Position numbers and translations under genes: made by a program. Positions 55,353-64,000 of a stretch of 64,000 nt of DNA are shown one piece after another. How positions within the stretch are numbered: position 1 is the first letter of the stretch; each line of letters begins with the position of its first letter. The notes beneath the pieces are model-generated. The model made no database searches and was not told the origin of the DNA. It saw only the letters and a list, made by a program, of their open reading frames with translations. The stretch covers positions 248,001-312,000 of IMG/VR virus record IMGVR_UViG_3300028558_000016. One strand, 5' to 3'.

Positions 55353-56801
55353 ATGGCAACAAAATCATCAACAATGTCCGGCGAGGACATTAAAAAAACA
55401 GCGATCGATAAAGGATTAAAGGTCGCAATACTCGTATGTGTGTCAGATGACAACAATAACAAGTATTTCAATATGTACGAACAAGGAGATGGAACTTACA
55501 TGGTAATCCGCGGAAGAGTGGACGTTACCGAAATAATCGAAGGTCCATACCCAATGTCAAAATGGGATGTTCATTACAAGGACAAAACAAAAGCAAACAA
55601 AAAACCAAAACCTTACACTGATCAAACTCATTTGTTCTCTGAACAAAAGAAAAGCGATGGTGCAGGAAAGAAAAAAGAAAAATCATCGAACTTCCATTCA
55701 AAGAGAACTGCAATGGTAATTGATTTCGTGAAACAACTTCAAAAATTCGCAAATCAATCGGTAGAAGAAAACTACACGGTATCAGCCGCAAACGTTACTA
55801 AGAAGCAAGTTGATTTCGCTCAACAAACTTTAAATCAAATTAGCGACATGGTTAAGAAAGGCGCAGAGGTTGGTCCAATCAATGACAAACTAATGGAGCT
55901 TTATCAAATCATTCCTCGTCGTATGAAACATGTGAATAACCACCTCATCATTACAGATGAAATGGAAAAAACACTTGGTAAAGTTGAGAAGACCGACAAA
56001 GAAAAAATGAAAGAGGCGAAAGCTAAAACATATTCAATGAAGATTAAATCTGATGCCGAGTTACAAAAAGCGCATGACATGATTGCCGGTGAGCAAGATA
56101 CTCTTGACGTTATGGCAGGTCAGGTTGCTGTTGAAGAACAGGAAAAGAAAGATCACGTTGAAACCCCAGGTGCTAAAAAAGAATACGATTTATTGCACGC
56201 AATGAAACTTGATATGGAAGATTGCGATAAGTATGAAATTGCAATGCTTAAGAATATGCTTGATCAAAACGCTAAAGCCGGCCACGAAAAGAATTCAAAC
56301 CTTTTCAAACGTGCATATCGCGTTAAGAACGATAGCACTGAAGTTGCTTACAACAATTTCATGGGTAAAGTTAAAAACAAGAAGAAGGAATTATTGTGGC
56401 ATGGAAGTCGCAATGAAAACTGGTGGAGCATTTTCCAACAAGGTTTAGTTCTTCGTCCTACCAATGCAGTAATCACCGGTAAGATGTTTGGTTACGGATT
56501 ATATTTCGCTGACAAGGCGCAAAAATCCATAAACTACTCTTCTTATTCTGGAGCATCACGCTCTTACACAGGGGGTTCATCAAGGAATGCAATTCTTGCG
56601 GTATATGAAGTTCACCAAGGAGATCAATTGGTAATTAAACGTCATGAGCACTCACACTCACAATTGACTGATAAACAAATGGAAAAACACGGTAAAGATT
56701 CTGTGTTCGCTCAAGGCGGTTATGACCTTGTGAATAACGAATACATTGTGTACAAGCAACAACAATGTACTATAAAATATCTTGTTGAAATTGGGAACTA
56801 A
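55353..56801 (+). CDS. Poly(ADP-ribose) polymerase-like protein (WGR-like, regulatory and catalytic domains)
   Basis: NNKYFNM...IRGRV; LMELYQIIPR; LLWHGSR, GKMFGYGLYFADKAQKSINY, NEYIVY (H-Y-E triad). Confidence 0.9.
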   Translation: MATKSSTMSGEDIKKTAIDKGLKVAILVCVSDDNNNKYFNMYEQGDGTYMVIRGRVDVTEIIEGPYPMSKWDVHYKDKTKANKKPKPYTDQTHLFSEQKKSDGAGKKKEKSSNFHSKRTAMVIDFVKQLQKFANQSVEENYTVSAANVTKKQVDFAQQTLNQISDMVKKGAEVGPINDKLMELYQIIPRRMKHVNNHLIITDEMEKTLGKVEKTDKEKMKEAKAKTYSMKIKSDAELQKAHDMIAGEQDTLDVMAGQVAVEEQEKKDHVETPGAKKEYDLLHAMKLDMEDCDKYEIAMLKNMLDQNAKAGHEKNSNLFKRAYRVKNDSTEVAYNNFMGKVKNKKKELLWHGSRNENWWSIFQQGLVLRPTNAVITGKMFGYGLYFADKAQKSINYSSYSGASRSYTGGSSRNAILAVYEVHQGDQLVIKRHEHSHSQLTDKQMEKHGKDSVFAQGGYDLVNNEYIVYKQQQCTIKYLVEIGN

Positions 56802-58008: not shown

Positions 58009-58830
58009 ATGAGTACAACAGCCACAAAAAAAATCGACAAGGATGCTGTTTTTAAAACAGCAGTTAAATTAATGACTGACAATGGAAAAACTTCTTCATT
58101 GGAAGTAAAAGAAGAATTACGTAAAGATGGGTATTGGGCAAAACAAGAACCCGTTCGTGATTTGCTTCGCGAATTAAAAAGTGAACACAATTGGAACGTG
58201 AATGATGTTGGTCACATTGAATATTCTCTTCCAACAGCAACATCCGCAGCAACAACCGGTCCTTCTCCAATTGAAGGTGACATCATCGATTTAATCGTTG
58301 AGACAACCAACATTGACGAAGATGATGTTGAAACTACAAGCATTCTTACTACAGATCTTTCAATGGACCATCTTGATATTATTTCATTGCAAATGGCCAT
58401 CGACAAAAAATTCAGTGTTGACTCTTCTAAAGATTGGAACAATATCAACACCGTTGACGATGTTATTAAGTTGGTGGAAAAGCTTACAGCCGGAACTCCT
58501 TTTGCGAAAGCTCCAACTACTTCTTTACATTCAGTTATGAATCCAAAAACAACTGGAAAACCAAGAAAACCAAAAATGGTTATTAATGATTCTCAAAATC
58601 CATCAACGGATCCTCGTGTTACAATCAACATTGATTACAAGAAGATTGTTACAGGCACGAAAGATGCCAAAGACACATGTGATGGAAAAGACTGGTATGT
58701 TTCTAACAAAGGAACTGATCCGGTAATTTATGATCAAAAATACAATTCCAACAACGTGAGAACCGTATATGCTCGTTTGAAAGGAATTAAGATACAGGAA
58801 GTTCGCGCAGCTCGCGTTGAACATCTATAG
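58009..58830 (+). CDS. Three-domain protein with a central acyl-carrier-protein domain lacking the phosphopantetheine Ser
   Basis: aa 88-160 align with ACP (IIDLIVE...DLSMDHLDIISLQMAIDKKFSV...INTVDDVI); DSL is DHL. Confidence 0.8.
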   Translation: MSTTATKKIDKDAVFKTAVKLMTDNGKTSSLEVKEELRKDGYWAKQEPVRDLLRELKSEHNWNVNDVGHIEYSLPTATSAATTGPSPIEGDIIDLIVETTNIDEDDVETTSILTTDLSMDHLDIISLQMAIDKKFSVDSSKDWNNINTVDDVIKLVEKLTAGTPFAKAPTTSLHSVMNPKTTGKPRKPKMVINDSQNPSTDPRVTINIDYKKIVTGTKDAKDTCDGKDWYVSNKGTDPVIYDQKYNSNNVRTVYARLKGIKIQEVRAARVEHL

Positions 58831-58884
58831 GAAAACGGTAAACCCATGGTTGCCATGGTTGGTTGTCCTTTGGGTATTATCGTG

Positions 58885-58913
58885 AAAGGGTGGGAGGAAA
58901 CTTCCACCCTTTT
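58885..58913 (+). terminator. Intrinsic terminator
   Basis: aaagggtgg...gaaa...ccacccttt. Confidence 0.75.
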
Positions 58914-58963
58914 AATTTTCCATGACTTTAAGAAGTATATAGCTTTAAATAACCAACACAGTC

Positions 58964-59113
58964 ATGGCCAAAGCAAAAGCAGCCTCCACCAACTCAGTAA
59001 GGGCTTTAAACAGTTCAAAGAAGAACAGACCCGGAGTTCATTCCAAAAAGAAGAATTCAAGTCTTAAATCATCTAAAAACTATAAAAAGGCATATAGAGG
59101 ACAGGGTAGATGA
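58964..59113 (+). CDS. 49-aa highly basic peptide ending YRGQGR (not in the ORF track)
   Basis: MAKAKAASTNSVRALNSSKKNRPGVHSKKKNSSLKSSKNYKKAYRGQGR; preceded by gtatata. Confidence 0.7.
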   Translation: MAKAKAASTNSVRALNSSKKNRPGVHSKKKNSSLKSSKNYKKAYRGQGR

Positions 59114-59230
59114 AACATTGTTTTGAGATTAGGGTATAGCTTTAGAAGGTTGCATCCAGCAAAAACAACTATCGTCTATGGCTTCGGCCTTCGATGATCC
59201 TACGACCTAAGCAATCTGTGTTAGTTTCAT
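59110..59230 (+). ncRNA. Candidate structured RNA downstream of the basic peptide
   Basis: Nested stems atgaaac/gtttcat, agatt/aatct, ttagg/cctaa, atcgtc/gatgat, ggc-TTCG-gcc. Confidence 0.35.
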
Positions 59231-59259
59231 TTGTTTTATTTTTATTAAAAGTGTAAGAG

Positions 59260-59290
59260 TCCAGGCCCCGTAAGGCCTGGATTTCTTATT
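59260..59290 (+). terminator. Intrinsic terminator
   Basis: tccaggcc-ccgtaa-ggcctgga followed by a T-rich run. Confidence 0.75.
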
Positions 59291-59308
59291 TTTCTTATAA
59301 GTAGATTA

Positions 59309-59320
59309 TTGGTATATTTG
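59309..59320 (+). promoter_or_regulatory. Bacteroidota-type -7 promoter element
   Basis: ttggtatatttg, ending 7 nt before the ATG. Confidence 0.55.
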
Positions 59321-59327
59321 CATTATA

Positions 59328-60485
59328 ATGCAGATACCTAAAGACATAGCAGAAATTCAACAAAAATTCATCGCCGCTGGAAAAGAAATTTTCCTCGTTG
59401 GTGGATGTGTTCGTGATTTCAAGCTTGGTCTTGAGCCCAAAGATTTGGACATGGCAACCAATGCCTTTCCAGAAGAAATTGAAACCATCCTCAAAGGAGT
59501 TGAGATGGACCTTACAGGCAAAAGTTTTGGAGTCATGCGGGTTCGCAGTGAGTTCGATCCAAACGGATACGAAATTGCCACATACAGAGAAGATGAGAGT
59601 GCTGGAAGAAAACCGACCGTAAAGATCGGATCAACCATGGAAAACGATGCGTGGAGAAGAGACTTCACGATCAACGCTCTTTACTATGATATTTCCAACA
59701 AGACTATAATTGATCACACTGGCGGGCTCAATGATTTAGAAAACAAAATCATTCGTGCTTGTGGCGATCCTGCGAAAAGAATTAACGATGATGCTTTGAG
59801 AATGCTTAGGGCAGTTCGTTTCAAAAATACTATTGGTGGAACTATTGATGTTGACTTGCATAATGCAATGTTGGCCAATCCTGTTTTACAAGGTCCAGAC
59901 AAAGATGGAAATATAGTACCAATATCACAGGAGAGAATAGCTGAGGAATTCCTTAAAGGTCTTTCCAAAAGCTACAACATGGATCTCGTTGACCAATATG
60001 TGAAAGATTTAATGACATACCAATTTCTTGGACAAGTGTTCAGAGGACTTCACGTAAATGATAATTTTACATGCAACTCAAGAAAGCCTGAGATAATGAT
60101 TGCGGATCTTTTACGTTTTAATACGAATCACAAGGATTTATTTAATAAGCTTGTTTATGATTGCAAATTCAGTATTGATATTGCCGAAGGAGTTATTTTT
60201 CTTTTGAGCCTTGAAGATATTGATGAGGACAAAGTGTACAAGCTAAGAAAAAGAATGGACAGCAAAACCAAATTAAATAAGGATGATCTTATTATTTATT
60301 CAGGTTTAATGGTAGAGAATGGAATGATTGGAAGAGTTGCTTATGTACATGCATTCACTAAATATTCCATAACAACAAGCGGAGATGAATTAAAAGAAAA
60401 GGAAGGATTTGTTGATGGAGCAGAACTTGGAGCAGAGATAGCAAAAAGAGAGAAAAACAATTTTTTAAAAATATTTACACAATGA
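59328..60485 (+). CDS. cca: Class II CCA-adding tRNA nucleotidyltransferase / poly(A) polymerase family
   Basis: VGGCVRD...KDLDMAT; EIATYR; DAWRRDFTINAL; DDALRMLRAVRF; ERI..E. Confidence 0.85.
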   Translation: MQIPKDIAEIQQKFIAAGKEIFLVGGCVRDFKLGLEPKDLDMATNAFPEEIETILKGVEMDLTGKSFGVMRVRSEFDPNGYEIATYREDESAGRKPTVKIGSTMENDAWRRDFTINALYYDISNKTIIDHTGGLNDLENKIIRACGDPAKRINDDALRMLRAVRFKNTIGGTIDVDLHNAMLANPVLQGPDKDGNIVPISQERIAEEFLKGLSKSYNMDLVDQYVKDLMTYQFLGQVFRGLHVNDNFTCNSRKPEIMIADLLRFNTNHKDLFNKLVYDCKFSIDIAEGVIFLLSLEDIDEDKVYKLRKRMDSKTKLNKDDLIIYSGLMVENGMIGRVAYVHAFTKYSITTSGDELKEKEGFVDGAELGAEIAKREKNNFLKIFTQ

Positions 60486-61174
60486 ACGAATCAAAAGACT
60501 TAAAAAGTTTAATAGCATCCTTGCAGGAAGGAAGCGAGTTTTGTGATTTCATGATAACAAAGCTTCTTCACATGGATGGGTCCACCGATGCCGATCTTAA
60601 AAAAGATTACAGAAAACTCTTTAAAGAAGGAGGAGCTGATGCTTTTAAAGATGACATGAAAAATGGAAAGAAATTAAAGTATACAGAAGAAGAGCTTGAA
60701 ATGATCGAGGAAAAAATAAATGAAATTTTTCCAGAAGGTCATGAGCCACTCACAACAACAATGATACCATTCGGTTTTTATCTTGGACAATTATTAAGAA
60801 AGAAGATACCAGGTGCTGAATGGAAAGTGACAGATGAGGTTAACAAGAAAAACAGTATATGGGATGTCTTTATTGAATTTAAAAATTCTGACGGATATAC
60901 CATGCAGGCTAAACCGTTCATGCGCGTTGATAAATTTTGGAGAAGGAGAGAAGATAAGATGTCAGCATTCGTTAAGATGATTGAAATGACATCTGAAATT
61001 AAAATGGATCCTGAGTATTGGAATAAACGCGCAGATGATGAAGGTTGGATTGAAACCGCTAACGAAATGTCGTTCAGGGTTTTTCAAGGAAGCAAGAAAG
61101 ATAAAATAGATGGAGATTTCTCTAAAGCAAAGGGAATGTTTCATAACGGAAAATTTGGAGATGGAAAATATTAA
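60482..61174 (+). CDS. Hypothetical protein (weakly DUF3806-like)
   Basis: FGFYLGQLL...GAEW motif; ATGA-coupled. Confidence 0.5.
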   Translation: MNESKDLKSLIASLQEGSEFCDFMITKLLHMDGSTDADLKKDYRKLFKEGGADAFKDDMKNGKKLKYTEEELEMIEEKINEIFPEGHEPLTTTMIPFGFYLGQLLRKKIPGAEWKVTDEVNKKNSIWDVFIEFKNSDGYTMQAKPFMRVDKFWRRREDKMSAFVKMIEMTSEIKMDPEYWNKRADDEGWIETANEMSFRVFQGSKKDKIDGDFSKAKGMFHNGKFGDGKY

Positions 61175-62501
61175 TAAAATAAAAGACATACACTCGAGTG
61201 ATGCCTATGGAATTCTGGTAGAGACTGGATGTGGTCTTGCGGTATCTAATGAATTGCTTGAAGTCAGCGGTGCATCTAATACGGTTTATTTTGCTGAATG
61301 TCCATACAGCAAGGAATATCAAACATTCAAGTATGGCGAAACCAATGCGAGAGCGGTTTCAATGGAAAACATAAAGCACATAATGAATTATCATAAAGCT
61401 TTAGATAAACCAGAAAACGTTAACTTCATTTATGCTTCATCCTTTCAAGTAGGAGAACACAACGATAAATCAACTCATGGATGGATAGGTCTTTCATTAA
61501 AAGAAGATGACAGACGTTATTTCCACATCTCAATACATGAGTCATTAACACGAAAACAATACATCGATAAAATATCTAAGATAGGAATTGACATTTTACA
61601 TTTTTACATAAACAAATCAACTGGTACAAATTTCATACCGAGCAATTGTTGCATTGACATAGTACTTAATGGAAAAGGTGAACAGGTCAATTTAACTGAT
61701 ATGTTTGTTTCTCTTAGATATGAAGACGATGAAAACTTCTTATGCTTCAAAGAAGGAAAATTAGTTAGAATGGAAGATCTTTTCAGAGATCAAAAGAACA
61801 TAGTATTATTCAAGGGAAGCTTTAATCCAATCCATGCCGCTCACATACACACTGCACAATTAGCAAAGGATGAATATGGAATTGAACCTGTGTTTGTTAT
61901 TAGTTCTTCAGTGTATCAAAAAGGATGGATAGAACCTGAGGATCTTAAGAACCGAGTGGAAACATTAAACGAACTTGGCTATCCTGTTATAATAACTAAA
62001 GATGGTTACTTTAACAAGAACACGTCCTATATTAGACGTAAATTCAAACAACCTTTGATATACGTAGTTGGTTCGGATACATTAAACAGAATATTGGAAA
62101 GCTCATATAACATTTTAAATCCAGAACTTAGCGAGAGATATAATCATTACGTCAATCAATTGATTTCCATGAAGCCTGAGAATGAACTGATAACAGACGA
62201 AGAATTGGATGAAATAGAAAAAATGGCATTACAACATTATTTAAGAAGATTCAAAGAGGATTTCAAAGATGTAAAATTCTTCGTTGTAAATAGACCAGGG
62301 AGCGAATTGCACGAAGATGCAAAACGAATAGAAGAATTTTATTCAATGGTTGAAGAACATCCTGAGTATTTCCATATAAGCTCAACTAAAATTCGTGCCA
62401 TGCTTATAGCTGGAGATTATGAGACAATTAAAAAATTGATACCAGAAAAAATATTTGAAAAGTATATTAACCAAAAAACAAACAACCATGTCAACAACTA
62501 A
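61161..62501 (+). CDS. CinA-like domain fused to an NMNAT-like (HxGH-class) nucleotidyltransferase
   Basis: N-terminal ETGCG...LL.VSGASNTV...PYS; C-terminal FKGSFNPIHAAH, VVGSDT..R, F.V..R, ISSTKIR. Confidence 0.75.
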   Translation: MENINKIKDIHSSDAYGILVETGCGLAVSNELLEVSGASNTVYFAECPYSKEYQTFKYGETNARAVSMENIKHIMNYHKALDKPENVNFIYASSFQVGEHNDKSTHGWIGLSLKEDDRRYFHISIHESLTRKQYIDKISKIGIDILHFYINKSTGTNFIPSNCCIDIVLNGKGEQVNLTDMFVSLRYEDDENFLCFKEGKLVRMEDLFRDQKNIVLFKGSFNPIHAAHIHTAQLAKDEYGIEPVFVISSSVYQKGWIEPEDLKNRVETLNELGYPVIITKDGYFNKNTSYIRRKFKQPLIYVVGSDTLNRILESSYNILNPELSERYNHYVNQLISMKPENELITDEELDEIEKMALQHYLRRFKEDFKDVKFFVVNRPGSELHEDAKRIEEFYSMVEEHPEYFHISSTKIRAMLIAGDYETIKKLIPEKIFEKYINQKTNNHVNN

Positions 62502-63157: not shown

Positions 63158-64000
63158 ATGTATAACATAAAATACCCGGTCGCATTCCACCCAGTGGATA
63201 TGGCCATAACAAGAATACACGAAGGAAGAATACAAGTTCTCCTTGCGCAAAAAGTAAAAGACACAGAAGGTGGAGCTAACATTGTTAGATTCCCTGGAGG
63301 TTTCCTTGATGTGTGTGACTCGTGTGCTGAAGAAGCAGCATTGAGAGAAGCAATGGAAGAAACAGGAATGAGATTTGGAAACTCTGCTATGGCAGATTAT
63401 TTCATCGGATACTTTGCTAAGAAGAAACCATTTACCGATAAGTTGAACAAACTTATAGAATCAAACGGTGATGCAAAGGAAATAACTGAAACCATCAACC
63501 AATTGCATGCAATCAAAATATCCGATGATGCTTTAGCATGGTTGAGAACAAGAACAACTTACATTGGTTCAACTAAGATTGATGATGCAAGATATGCTGA
63601 CACAGATCACAAAGTAATCACAAGCTTTTATGAGCTACATCCAAATCCAAAATTCGATAAGGATGGTGAAGGTCCATTTGATGACATCGCAAGAACAAAA
63701 TGGTTTTTCCTTTCAGACATTAAAGAAGAAATCATGCACAAGTCGCATGTTCCATTGTTCAACATGTTATTTGAAAAATACAAAGCAGAGAGACTTGCAG
63801 ACAACGTGTTTAACGCTGCTGAAGAGGTATTCAAATCAACAGAGGAAATGTTCAACACCTTCAAAAAAGAAACTGATGAGATTTTTGATGGAATAAAAAA
63901 GAAAATGCCTGAATACGAAAAGAAAGTGGATGAAGCAATGCAAGGCATGGGAAAGAAAATGGATAAGTTCTTTAGCGGTTTAGAAGATATTTTAAAATCT
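63158..64000 (+). CDS. Nudix hydrolase (ADP-ribose pyrophosphatase-like), running off the window end; not in the ORF track
   Basis: RFPGGFLDVCDSCAEEAALREAMEETG Nudix box; later DDARY and DDIARTKW; frame open to 64000. Confidence 0.85.
   Translation, partial: MYNIKYPVAFHPVDMAITRIHEGRIQVLLAQKVKDTEGGANIVRFPGGFLDVCDSCAEEAALREAMEETGMRFGNSAMADYFIGYFAKKKPFTDKLNKLIESNGDAKEITETINQLHAIKISDDALAWLRTRTTYIGSTKIDDARYADTDHKVITSFYELHPNPKFDKDGEGPFDDIARTKWFFLSDIKEEIMHKSHVPLFNMLFEKYKAERLADNVFNAAEEVFKSTEEMFNTFKKETDEIFDGIKKKMPEYEKKVDEAMQGMGKKMDKFFSGLEDILKS

What the first reader, a model, noticed from the sequence alone, without database searches (positions are those of the whole stretch)
58935..59290. Self-contained unit: tiny basic YRGQGR peptide followed by a structured RNA
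Seen: between two terminators (58885 and 59260) lie a gtatata late-like motif, a 49-codon Lys/Ser/Arg-rich ORF missed by the track, and about 120 nt forming nested stems capped by a C(UUCG)G tetraloop. Inference: the tail KKxYRGQG resembles small basic proteins I recall from other large phages. The pair could be an RNA-binding or ribosome-associated peptide with its own RNA (a small RNP), or a peptide with a regulatory 3' UTR.
Basis: partly seen in the sequence, partly recalled or inferred. Interest (0 to 1): 0.6.

Follow-up and report, generated by a model that had tools for sequence, protein, structure and literature searches.

The report
Conserved tiny polycationic phage peptide gene
The 49-codon gene is real and belongs to a very widespread, uncharacterised family of tiny, highly positively charged phage peptides, but the "structured RNA" behind it is just the gene's 3' untranslated tail and terminator.

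Summary
The window is part of a 482 kb huge-phage record. The unit is real: two strong intrinsic terminators (58883-58914, 59257-59284) bracket one ORF, 58964-59113, 49 aa, no acidic residue.

The peptide belongs to a large family: 313 clusters at 50% identity and more than 283 IMG/VR loci. Members are always stand-alone, 42-50 aa, with mean net charge +15. They carry near-invariant RPGVH(S/A)K and KNYKKxY(R/K)GQG(R/K)-COOH motifs. Members occur in 13 cultured Pelagibacter podophages, in Flavobacterium phage immuto and in a 634 kb megaphage, all annotated as hypothetical. No cellular homologue, Pfam, NCBIfam or PDB match was found. AlphaFold gives an extended coil.

The RNA idea fails:
- The 147 nt fold is no more stable than shuffled sequence (z -0.10).
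- It has no Rfam match.
- It is shared only with one 90%-identical relative, with no compensatory pairs.
- About 100 other loci lack it; there the gene abuts or overlaps its neighbours.
- Only a small C(UUCG)G hairpin is real.

Two new family-level observations: the gene sits preferentially just downstream of lysis cassettes, and its phages almost lack Shine-Dalgarno sites.

Function is unknown. My best guess is a late-made binder of a conserved polyanion, nucleic acid first and cell envelope second.

The parts
58009..58830 (+). Upstream gene, 273 aa, acyl-carrier-protein-like. It is not part of the unit; its transcript ends at terminator 1.
   Evidence: phrog_5934 acyl carrier protein, E 2.8e-10. 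The L007 orthologue is 80% identical.
58883..58914 (+). Intrinsic terminator 1: 14 bp stem, GAAA-type loop, T-rich tail. It closes the upstream gene and insulates the peptide unit.
   Evidence: z = -5.0. The stem is kept in L007, including a T-A to C-G double change read from alignment A2.
58915..58963 (+). 49 nt leader or promoter region holding GTATATA (58935-58941). It has no Shine-Dalgarno site and no sigma-70-like match.
   Evidence: Sequence. No promoter hit here. The 58831-58963 stretch is 88% identical to L007, against 59-75% at third codon positions. The motif is not recurrent.
58964..59113 (+). Gene for the 49 aa polycationic peptide: MAK start, RPGVHSK core, C-terminal KNYKKAYRGQGR, TGA stop.
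   Evidence: First and second codon positions of residues 21-49 are 100% identical to L007. It is a single copy in the 482 kb genome.
59114..59170 (+). Proximal 3' UTR. It is conserved with the one relative but has no significant structure.
   Evidence: 86% identity (50 of 58 columns; p = 0.0003 against a neutral rate of 0.65, p = 0.03 against 0.75). Fold z = -0.87 here and +0.09 in L007. The frame is closed by TAA in L007, so it is not a read-through extension.
59171..59198 (+). Small hairpin: 6 bp outer stem, 3 bp inner stem, C(UUCG)G tetraloop at 59183-59186.
   Evidence: -10.3 kcal/mol, z = -2.6. It is kept in L007 with an 8 nt insertion, z = -1.2.
59199..59256 (+). Distal A/T-rich 3' UTR. 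It is not conserved.
   Evidence: About 62% identity to L007, the neutral level.
59257..59294 (+). Intrinsic terminator 2 (11 bp G+C-rich stem plus T tract). It ends the peptide transcript.
   Evidence: -21.8 kcal/mol, z = -6.5. 91% identical in L007.
59328..60485 (+). Downstream gene, 385 aa, CCA-adding or poly(A) polymerase-type nucleotidyltransferase. It is a separate transcription unit.
   Evidence: PF01743, E 1.1e-32. NCBIfam CCA tRNA nucleotidyltransferase or PcnB, below the curated cut-offs.

Best explanation
Shown. Positions 58883-59294 are a monocistronic, terminator-insulated cassette in a 482 kb phage. It encodes one member of a very large, phage-only family of peptides of about 46 aa. 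Members are intrinsically extended, with net charge about +15 and almost no acidic or hydrophobic residues. The 145 nt between the stop codon and terminator 2 is the mRNA's 3' UTR, with one small UUCG hairpin. It is not a partner RNA.

Inferred. The peptide is made with the late genes. In about a third of family members it is co-transcribed, and often start/stop-overlapped, with the 3' end of the lysis cassette. It probably acts by laying one conserved basic/aromatic face onto a conserved polyanion. That face comprises the even-numbered positions 22-32 and 38-48: R, G, H, K, K, S and K, Y, K, Y, G, G.

I rank nucleic acid as the most likely target, in the manner of the extended tails of small ribosomal proteins or of minor-groove-binding basic peptides. 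That could be host ribosomal or other RNA, or DNA. The reason is that such strict residue conservation is typical of binders of a specific structured site. It is not typical of generic membrane-active cations.
For: The unit:
- Both terminators are strong and the ORF is as described.

The family:
- 87 clusters were found by word search.
- 313 clusters at 50% identity were found by exhaustive profile search. None is a true fusion; the longer hits are miscalled starts or read-through calls.
- More than 283 IMG/VR loci encode it.
- Cultured members are 13 pelagiphages and Flavobacterium phage immuto. HTVC100P gp28 matches phrog_17967 at E 7e-18.
- Among 185,579 species genomes only 14 contigs carry it, all from MAGs or SAGs and scattered taxonomically. 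This suggests phage DNA rather than a cellular gene.

Conservation and composition:
- K42 and Q47 are invariant. M1, G24, K28, S32, K35, S37, K38, Y40 and G48 are at least 90% conserved across 146 sequences. Lysine makes up 25.8% of residues and D+E 1.5%.
- It is the only part of a 2.5 kb query that still matches the 634 kb phage at DNA level.

Structure:
- The AlphaFold model has no helix, one beta-bridge between residues 32 and 40, and pLDDT 78-83 over residues 21-40.

Late or lysis linkage:
- The immediate upstream neighbour is a peptidoglycan hydrolase from at least 6 Pfam families in about 13 of 77 loci, against about 2 of 73 downstream (p = 0.005).
- Small membrane proteins lie upstream in 48 of 231 cases and downstream in 12 of 224 (p = 8e-7).
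- Gene overlaps of -1 to -23 nt with the upstream gene are common.

The RNA is not a partner.
Against: - No binding partner has been observed, and nothing here tests nucleic-acid binding.
- The only statistically supported association is with lysis cassettes, which favours an envelope-directed role (the first rival).
- The window's own copy is not near lysis genes. It lies between an ACP-like gene and a CCA-adding enzyme.
- There is no sequence similarity to any ribosomal protein family.
- bS21, the precedent for a phage-borne ribosomal protein, co-occurs in only 1 of 42 records.
- Loci are not phylogenetically independent, so the p-values are optimistic.
- The first 57 nt of the 3' UTR are more conserved than neutral sites. 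I cannot explain this.
Confidence: 0.42

Rival explanations
1. Lysis accessory. The peptide is the last gene of the lysis cassette and acts on the cell envelope. It would be a polycation that binds anionic envelope components (lipid A or core phosphates, anionic phospholipids, peptidoglycan). That could help outer-membrane rupture, as a disruptin does, or mask debris. In huge phages the gene would have become a free-standing cassette.
For: - The gene sits immediately downstream of endolysin, holin or spanin genes in about a third of loci, across at least 6 unrelated endolysin families, with an upstream/downstream asymmetry.
- In HTVC100P it follows peptidase M15 and a membrane protein.
- There is a precedent in phiKT gp28, a 56 aa cationic lysis peptide without a signal sequence.
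- All reliable hosts are diderms: Pelagibacter and Flavobacterium, plus a SUP05 SAG.
Against: - It is not amphipathic or helical. The model is coil, and A, V, I, L, M, F and W together make up about 20% of residues. Disruptin has +7 charge and predicted amphipathic helices.
- It coexists with a u-spanin-like gene in L104, so it does not replace spanins.
- Lysis membrane proteins usually diverge fast, whereas this peptide is 55-90% identical across podophages, myophages and megaphages.
- In the window, in L116-L118, L003 and LR745206 it is not next to lysis genes.
Confidence: 0.25
2. Virion cargo. The peptide is co-packaged with the genome as a DNA counter-ion, or is ejected with it. It would have been missed by proteomics because trypsin cuts it into fragments of 1-5 residues.
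For: - Late-module position, next to tail or virion genes in some loci: CrAss_Ring_2 directly downstream in L042 and L091, and Lcl_C and glycine-rich fibre-like neighbours elsewhere.
- Extreme positive charge.
- The MAK start and the lack of a Shine-Dalgarno site suit high expression; this is my inference.
Against: - It is never adjacent to capsid, portal or terminase genes in the Pfam tallies.
- Generic charge neutralisation would not need invariant Y, Q and G residues.
- There is no proteomic evidence.
Confidence: 0.12
3. The peptide and the downstream RNA of about 120 nt form a dedicated small ribonucleoprotein, or the RNA is an independent structured sRNA.
For: - A real C(UUCG)G hairpin.
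- The first 57 nt after the stop are 86% identical to L007, above the neutral level.
- The unit is insulated by terminators.
Against: - Global fold z = -0.10 and +0.48.
- No compensatory pair in 29 predicted pairs, though only 2 sequences could be compared.
- No Rfam family at gathering score; the best sub-threshold E-value is 0.065.
- No second copy in the genome and none in IMG/VR.
- About 100 other family loci have no such spacer.
Confidence: 0.04

Closest known systems
phrog_17967 and phrog_516 (PHROGs families of unknown function), for example Pelagibacter phage HTVC100P gp28 (QPZ53590.1) and Flavobacterium phage immuto gp185 (QQO92103.1)
   Same: Same length, MAK start, RPGVH(S/A/K)K core, C-terminal Y(R/K)GQG(R/K), extreme basicity and stand-alone gene.
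   Different: The window peptide itself reaches phrog_516 only at E 0.27. Those proteins are annotated as hypothetical, and I found no paper that discusses them. In the window the gene is a free-standing, terminator-flanked cassette rather than part of an operon.
Disruptin (phage phiKT gp28, a cationic lysis peptide)
   Same: A small, cationic, signal-less peptide encoded beside endolysin and holin genes. Many family members sit at the end of lysis cassettes.
   Different: gp28 has 56 aa, +7 charge and predicted amphipathic helices, associates with membranes, and has no homologues. This family has about +15 charge, is non-helical and hydrophilic, is strongly conserved, and coexists with a spanin-like gene.
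Phage-encoded ribosomal protein bS21 of Bacteroidetes phages and pelagiphages
   Same: A small, very basic protein carried by phages of Bacteroidota and SAR11, embedded in late regions and proposed to act late (PMC9723584). The peptide's phages are likewise poor in Shine-Dalgarno sites.
   Different: No homology to bS21 or to any ribosomal family. No cellular counterpart. bS21 is absent from this genome and co-occurs in only 1 of 42 records.
Protamine-like or histone-tail-like DNA-condensing peptides (from general knowledge; not tested)
   Same: Short, disordered, Lys/Arg/Ser-rich.
   Different: Such peptides evolve quickly and lack invariant motifs. This family has about 11 residues that are invariant or at least 90% conserved.

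Membership tests
Phage polycationic 'MAK...RPGVHSK...YRGQGR' peptide family (phrog_17967 / phrog_516-like) | Stand-alone product of 42-50 aa, with the motif ending exactly at the C-terminus | tested here: met
   49 aa ending in GQGR then TGA. Family members end the same way.
Phage polycationic 'MAK...RPGVHSK...YRGQGR' peptide family (phrog_17967 / phrog_516-like) | Conserved residues R22, G24, H26, K28, K30, S32, K35, S37, K38, Y40, K42, Y44, G46, Q47, G48 | tested here: met
   All are present in the window peptide (alignments A1 and A6).
Phage polycationic 'MAK...RPGVHSK...YRGQGR' peptide family (phrog_17967 / phrog_516-like) | Significant sequence match to family members and to the PHROG profiles | tested here: met
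   E 2.6e-16 to 1e-4 against 84 clusters. The PHROG profiles themselves match only weakly for this member: phrog_516 at E 0.27. They match better for relatives: 1.1e-4 and 7e-18.
Disruptin (phiKT gp28-like lysis peptide) | Predicted amphipathic alpha-helices and hydrophobic membrane association | tested here: not met
   The AlphaFold model has no helix. The composition is hydrophilic.
Disruptin (phiKT gp28-like lysis peptide) | Encoded within the lysis cassette of a phage that lacks spanins | tested here: not met
   The window copy lies between an ACP-like gene and a CCA-enzyme gene. The family is often next to lysis genes. However, L104 also carries a gene with a lipobox and a C-terminal membrane segment, which looks like a u-spanin.
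Disruptin (phiKT gp28-like lysis peptide) | Complements a spanin defect or disrupts the outer membrane | not testable with these tools
   Needs the lambda Rz/Rz1 complementation assay.
Bacterial small ribosomal proteins (bS21, bTHX, bL34-36 and similar) | Sequence homology to a ribosomal protein family | tested here: not met
   No Pfam hit at E 0.1 or below. No NCBIfam hit at E 1 or below. No PDB chain at E 10 or below with the family profile. No Foldseek hit.
Bacterial small ribosomal proteins (bS21, bTHX, bL34-36 and similar) | Orthologues in cellular genomes | tested here: not met
   Only 14 MAG or SAG contigs in 185,579 species genomes, taxonomically scattered and phage-like.
Bacterial small ribosomal proteins (bS21, bTHX, bL34-36 and similar) | Physical association with ribosomes | not testable with these tools
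   Needs sucrose gradients or cryo-EM.
Structured non-coding RNA (Rfam family or novel) | Match to a curated covariance model | tested here: not met
   No hit at gathering score across the 64 kb window. Only chance-level hits in 58850-59340. No tRNA or tmRNA.
Structured non-coding RNA (Rfam family or novel) | Folding energy beyond that of shuffled sequence | tested here: not met
   z = -0.10 in the window and +0.48 in L007. Only the 28 nt UUCG hairpin stands out, z = -2.6.
Structured non-coding RNA (Rfam family or novel) | Covariation or conservation among homologues | tested here: inconclusive
   Only one homologue exists (L007). It shows 0 compensatory pairs in 29. The hairpin and the distal part are at neutral identity, and the proximal 57 nt are at 86%. 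The RNA is absent from all other family loci.
Rho-independent (intrinsic) terminators | G+C-rich stem-loop followed by a T tract, conserved in the relative | tested here: met
   Both are kept in L007, terminator 1 with a double change that preserves pairing.

The most novel reading that the evidence does not exclude
This family may be a new functional class of phage effector: a peptide of about 46 aa and about +15 charge that docks as an extended strand pair onto a conserved host structure. It runs from 26-35 kb podophages, including the abundant HTVC010P-type pelagiphages, to 634 kb megaphages. It is confined to phages whose genes lack Shine-Dalgarno sites. One version is a virus-only 'ribosomal protein' that retunes Shine-Dalgarno-independent translation late in infection. 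Another is a new polycationic lysis factor distinct from spanins and disruptins.
Probability: 0.25. Interest if true: 0.8.

Novelty: new member of a known kind. Interest (0 to 1): 0.45.

Why it matters
The RNP idea that made the finding attractive does not hold. The peptide itself, however, is one of the most conserved and widespread small proteins of aquatic and gut phages of Bacteroidota and SAR11, including HTVC010P-type pelagiphages. It has no annotation, no Pfam family and, as far as I could find, no literature.

Gene callers and tryptic proteomics both tend to miss it. Its strict conservation, its linkage to lysis cassettes and its restriction to Shine-Dalgarno-poor genomes give concrete, cheap experiments in cultured systems: Flavobacterium phage immuto and the pelagiphages. 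These could reveal a new lysis or translation-takeover factor.

Tried and rejected
- tRNA or tmRNA in the spacer: none.
- Rfam at gathering and at E-value thresholds: nothing credible.
- A second copy of the RNA in the 482 kb genome: none.
- An exact 19-mer from the RNA in IMG/VR: none.
- Close relatives through the CCA enzyme in IMG/VR: none. Only L007 allows comparison.
- The spacer as the remnant of the 88-95 aa genes that follow the peptide in near relatives: no tblastn similarity.
- Read-through extension past TGA: closed by TAA in L007.
- GTATATA as a recurrent promoter: not enriched.
- GCTTCGGC occurs 4 times against 0.41 expected, but the other three copies lie in coding DNA without stems.
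- tblastn of the window peptide against cultured phages found nothing, probably because of low-complexity masking. Less repetitive relatives as queries worked.
- PDB profile search, Foldseek and both Atlas searches: no informative hit.
- Domain fusions: none. The longer hits are miscalled starts, one internal duplication (P0099), or TGA read as W.
- A single conserved neighbour gene across the family: none.
- Co-occurrence with bS21: 1 of 42 records, and none in this genome.

Full report
**What is at the coordinates**

The window is G000:C1:248001-312000 of a 482,156 bp virus record that CheckV rates complete.

Between the 273 aa acyl-carrier-protein-like gene (58009-58830; phrog_5934) and a 385 aa CCA-adding/PcnB-type nucleotidyltransferase (59328-60485; PF01743) lie two terminator-like hairpins, at 58883-58914 and 59257-59284. 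Folded alone they are far more stable than shuffled sequence, with z = -5.0 and -6.5.

Between them is a single ORF, 58964-59113, of 49 codons. It has no acidic residue, and Lys and Arg make up about a third of it. There is no Shine-Dalgarno sequence and no sigma-70-like site in the 49 nt leader. So the 'self-contained unit' is real.

**The peptide is a real, conserved gene**

- A word-indexed search found 87 clusters of 44-54 aa, with E down to 2.6e-16.
- An exhaustive profile search of 1.84 billion representatives found 313 clusters at E 0.001 or below, essentially all 36-50 aa.
- The few longer hits are miscalled upstream starts, one internal duplication, or calls that read the TGA stop as Trp. 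No informative fusion exists.
- IMG/VR holds more than 283 loci.
- In 146 aligned sequences K42 and Q47 are invariant. M1, G24, K28, S32, K35, S37, K38, Y40 and G48 are at least 90% conserved; R22, H26 and Y44 are conserved in about 85-89% of sequences. Lysine is 25.8% of residues, D+E 1.5%, and the mean net charge is +14.8 over 46 aa.
- Conserved positions fall mostly on even numbers in 22-32 and 38-48, the periodicity of an extended strand with one functional face.
- AlphaFold2 with this alignment gives no helix, a single bridge between residues 32 and 40, and pLDDT 78-83 over residues 21-40.
- Against the 90%-identical relative L007, residues 21-49 have no change at first and second codon positions, while third positions differ.
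- In a 2.5 kb blastn query, the C-terminal coding part was the only segment that matched any deposited phage. That phage is the 634 kb uncultured phage LR745206.1, where a 47 aa homologue is followed at once by a terminator.

**Where the family occurs**

- Cultured members are Flavobacterium phage vB_FspM_immuto (gp185) and 13 Pelagibacter podophages, including HTVC010P, HTVC100P (gp28) and Greip. All are annotated as hypothetical.
- HTVC100P gp28 is phrog_17967 (E 7e-18). Other members touch phrog_516 (best E 1.1e-4; the window peptide E 0.27).
- Pfam, NCBIfam, a PDB profile search, Foldseek and the ESM Atlas give nothing named.
- Among one genome for each of 185,579 prokaryote species, only 14 contigs encode it. 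All are MAG or SAG contigs from scattered taxa. I read these as phage DNA, so the family appears to be viral only.
- Complete genomes carrying it range from 26 kb to 113 kb with terminal repeats, and up to 482 and 634 kb.

**The RNA**

- The 147 nt from the stop codon to terminator 2 fold at -26.8 kcal/mol, against -26.4 +/- 3.6 for shuffles (z = -0.10). The L007 counterpart gives z = +0.48.
- RNAalifold on the pair finds 29 pairs with no compensatory change.
- There is no tRNA, tmRNA or Rfam family.
- The genome has no second copy, and IMG/VR has no exact match to a conserved 19-mer.
- None of about 100 other loci has similarity to it.
- In those loci the distance to the next gene is usually -17 to +60 nt. 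The nearest peptide relatives (78-69% identity) are followed within 0-22 nt by other genes.
- What is real is a 28 nt hairpin capped by C(UUCG)G (z = -2.6). L007 keeps it with an 8 nt insertion.
- The first 57 nt after the stop are 86% identical to L007, against 59-75% at third codon positions of the flanking genes. The hairpin and the distal part sit at 61-62%, the neutral level. That proximal conservation is unexplained. It does not fold significantly and is not coding, because L007 has an in-frame TAA.
- The region is best described as a 3' UTR plus intrinsic terminator.
- The 'late-like' GTATATA is not recurrent.

**Context across the family**

No single neighbour is conserved, but position is not random.

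- Of 77 distinct immediate upstream neighbours, about 13 are peptidoglycan hydrolases from at least six Pfam families: Peptidase_M15_4, M15_3, Amidase_2, Glucosaminidase, GH108/PG_binding_3 and GH19/PG_binding_1. Of 73 downstream neighbours about 2 are (Fisher p = 0.005).
- A further nine loci have an M15_3 endolysin two genes upstream. L091 has a holin-like gene and a lysozyme-like gene at positions -3 and -2.
- L104 reads: holin (PF05105), GH24-like lysozyme, a protein with a lipobox and a C-terminal membrane segment (u-spanin-like), then the peptide, overlapping by one base.
- Small membrane proteins are four times commoner in the three genes upstream than in the three downstream (48/231 against 12/224, p = 8e-7).
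- In HTVC100P the order is tail genes, peptidase M15, a membrane protein, then the peptide.
- In roughly a third of members, therefore, the gene is the last cistron of, or directly follows, the lysis cassette, often with overlapping stop and start codons.
- In huge phages it is instead a free-standing gene among auxiliary genes. In this window it lies next to the CCA enzyme. In L117 it lies next to IF3. In immuto it lies near NadR and TiaS. In LR745206 it lies next to an FKBP-like gene.
- These loci are not phylogenetically independent, so the statistics are indicative only.

**A second family-wide trait**

- Shine-Dalgarno-like cores occur 4-20 nt upstream of only 2 of 88 genes in the window, against a random background of 10%.
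- Across 95 family loci the figure is 65 of 841 genes (7.7%, median 0 per locus). The same crude caller gives 10 of 22 on phage lambda.
- Only the pelagiphage locus reaches 44%.
- This fits hosts that initiate translation without Shine-Dalgarno pairing, chiefly Bacteroidota. It also suggests that the contigs binned with Firmicutes or Bifidobacterium MAGs are misbinned.
- It may simply reflect phylogeny. It does parallel the distribution of phage-borne bS21, which is proposed to act late in Bacteroidetes phages (PMC9723584).
- bS21 itself is absent from this genome and present in only 1 of 42 records that carry the peptide.

**How it most likely works**

Shown: the gene, its insulation by terminators, its family, its composition, its lack of globular structure and its positional bias.

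Inferred: it is produced with late genes and binds a conserved polyanion through one basic/aromatic face.

I rank nucleic acid first, meaning rRNA or other structured RNA, or DNA. Invariant Tyr, Gln, Gly and His positions across very different phages are typical of peptides that fit a specific structured site, such as ribosomal-protein tails. They are not typical of generic membrane-active cations.

The envelope-directed lysis-accessory reading is a close second, because it is the only one with statistical support from context. It differs from the one characterised cationic lysis peptide, phiKT gp28, which has +7 charge and amphipathic helices. It also coexists with a spanin-like gene.

Virion cargo is third. 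The dedicated-RNP idea is unlikely.

**Limits**

- Only one homologue of the 3' region exists in the collections I could reach.
- All functional statements about the peptide are inference.

Noticed in passing
whole window; family loci L016-L121: Genes almost lack Shine-Dalgarno motifs. The window has 2 of 88 and the family loci 65 of 841, against 10 of 22 for a lambda control. This points to Bacteroidota-like hosts. It also suggests that contigs binned to Wujia (L100) and Bifidobacterium breve (L106) MAGs are misbinned phage DNA.
   Followed up: partly
window 55353-56801, 61110-62501, 63158-64000: NAD-related genes surround the unit: a 482 aa protein with a PARP catalytic domain, a cytidylyltransferase-like (NMNAT-type) protein and a NUDIX protein. 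Flavobacterium phage immuto also has NadR two genes upstream of its copy of the peptide gene.
   Followed up: no
window 59328-60485: A CCA-adding/PcnB-type nucleotidyltransferase is present, yet ARAGORN finds no tRNA gene anywhere in the 64 kb window.
   Followed up: no
window 58009-58830: A 273 aa protein has a central acyl-carrier-protein-like (PP-binding) domain (phrog_5934). It is conserved at 80% in the relative L007.
   Followed up: no
window 59114-59170: The first 57 nt of the 3' UTR are 86% identical to the only relative, although the rest of the UTR is at the neutral level. They have no significant fold and no ORF. This is unexplained.
   Followed up: partly
L104:112-1574: A compact cassette reads holin, GH24-like lysozyme, a protein with an N-terminal lipobox and a C-terminal membrane segment (u-spanin architecture), then the peptide gene overlapping by 1 nt.
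   Followed up: partly
L110:5620-6376 (Pelagibacter phage HTVC100P gp24 and gp22): Two further very basic small proteins follow the peptide gene. gp24 matches the C-terminal domain of several PHROGs of unknown function (phrog_10346, phrog_727 and others), and immuto gp186 touches phrog_727 too.
   Followed up: no
L117:95-589: A freshwater phage contig encodes a full translation initiation factor IF3 (IF3_N plus IF3_C), divergently adjacent to its copy of the peptide gene.
   Followed up: no
window 17499, 34710, 43499, 59181: The octamer GCTTCGGC occurs four times, all on the + strand, against 0.41 expected. Three copies lie inside coding DNA without flanking stems.
   Followed up: yes
proteins P0214, P0233, P0099: Some database gene calls read the family's TGA stop as Trp and run on. 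One member (P0099) carries a tandem duplication of the RKRPGVHSK segment.
   Followed up: no
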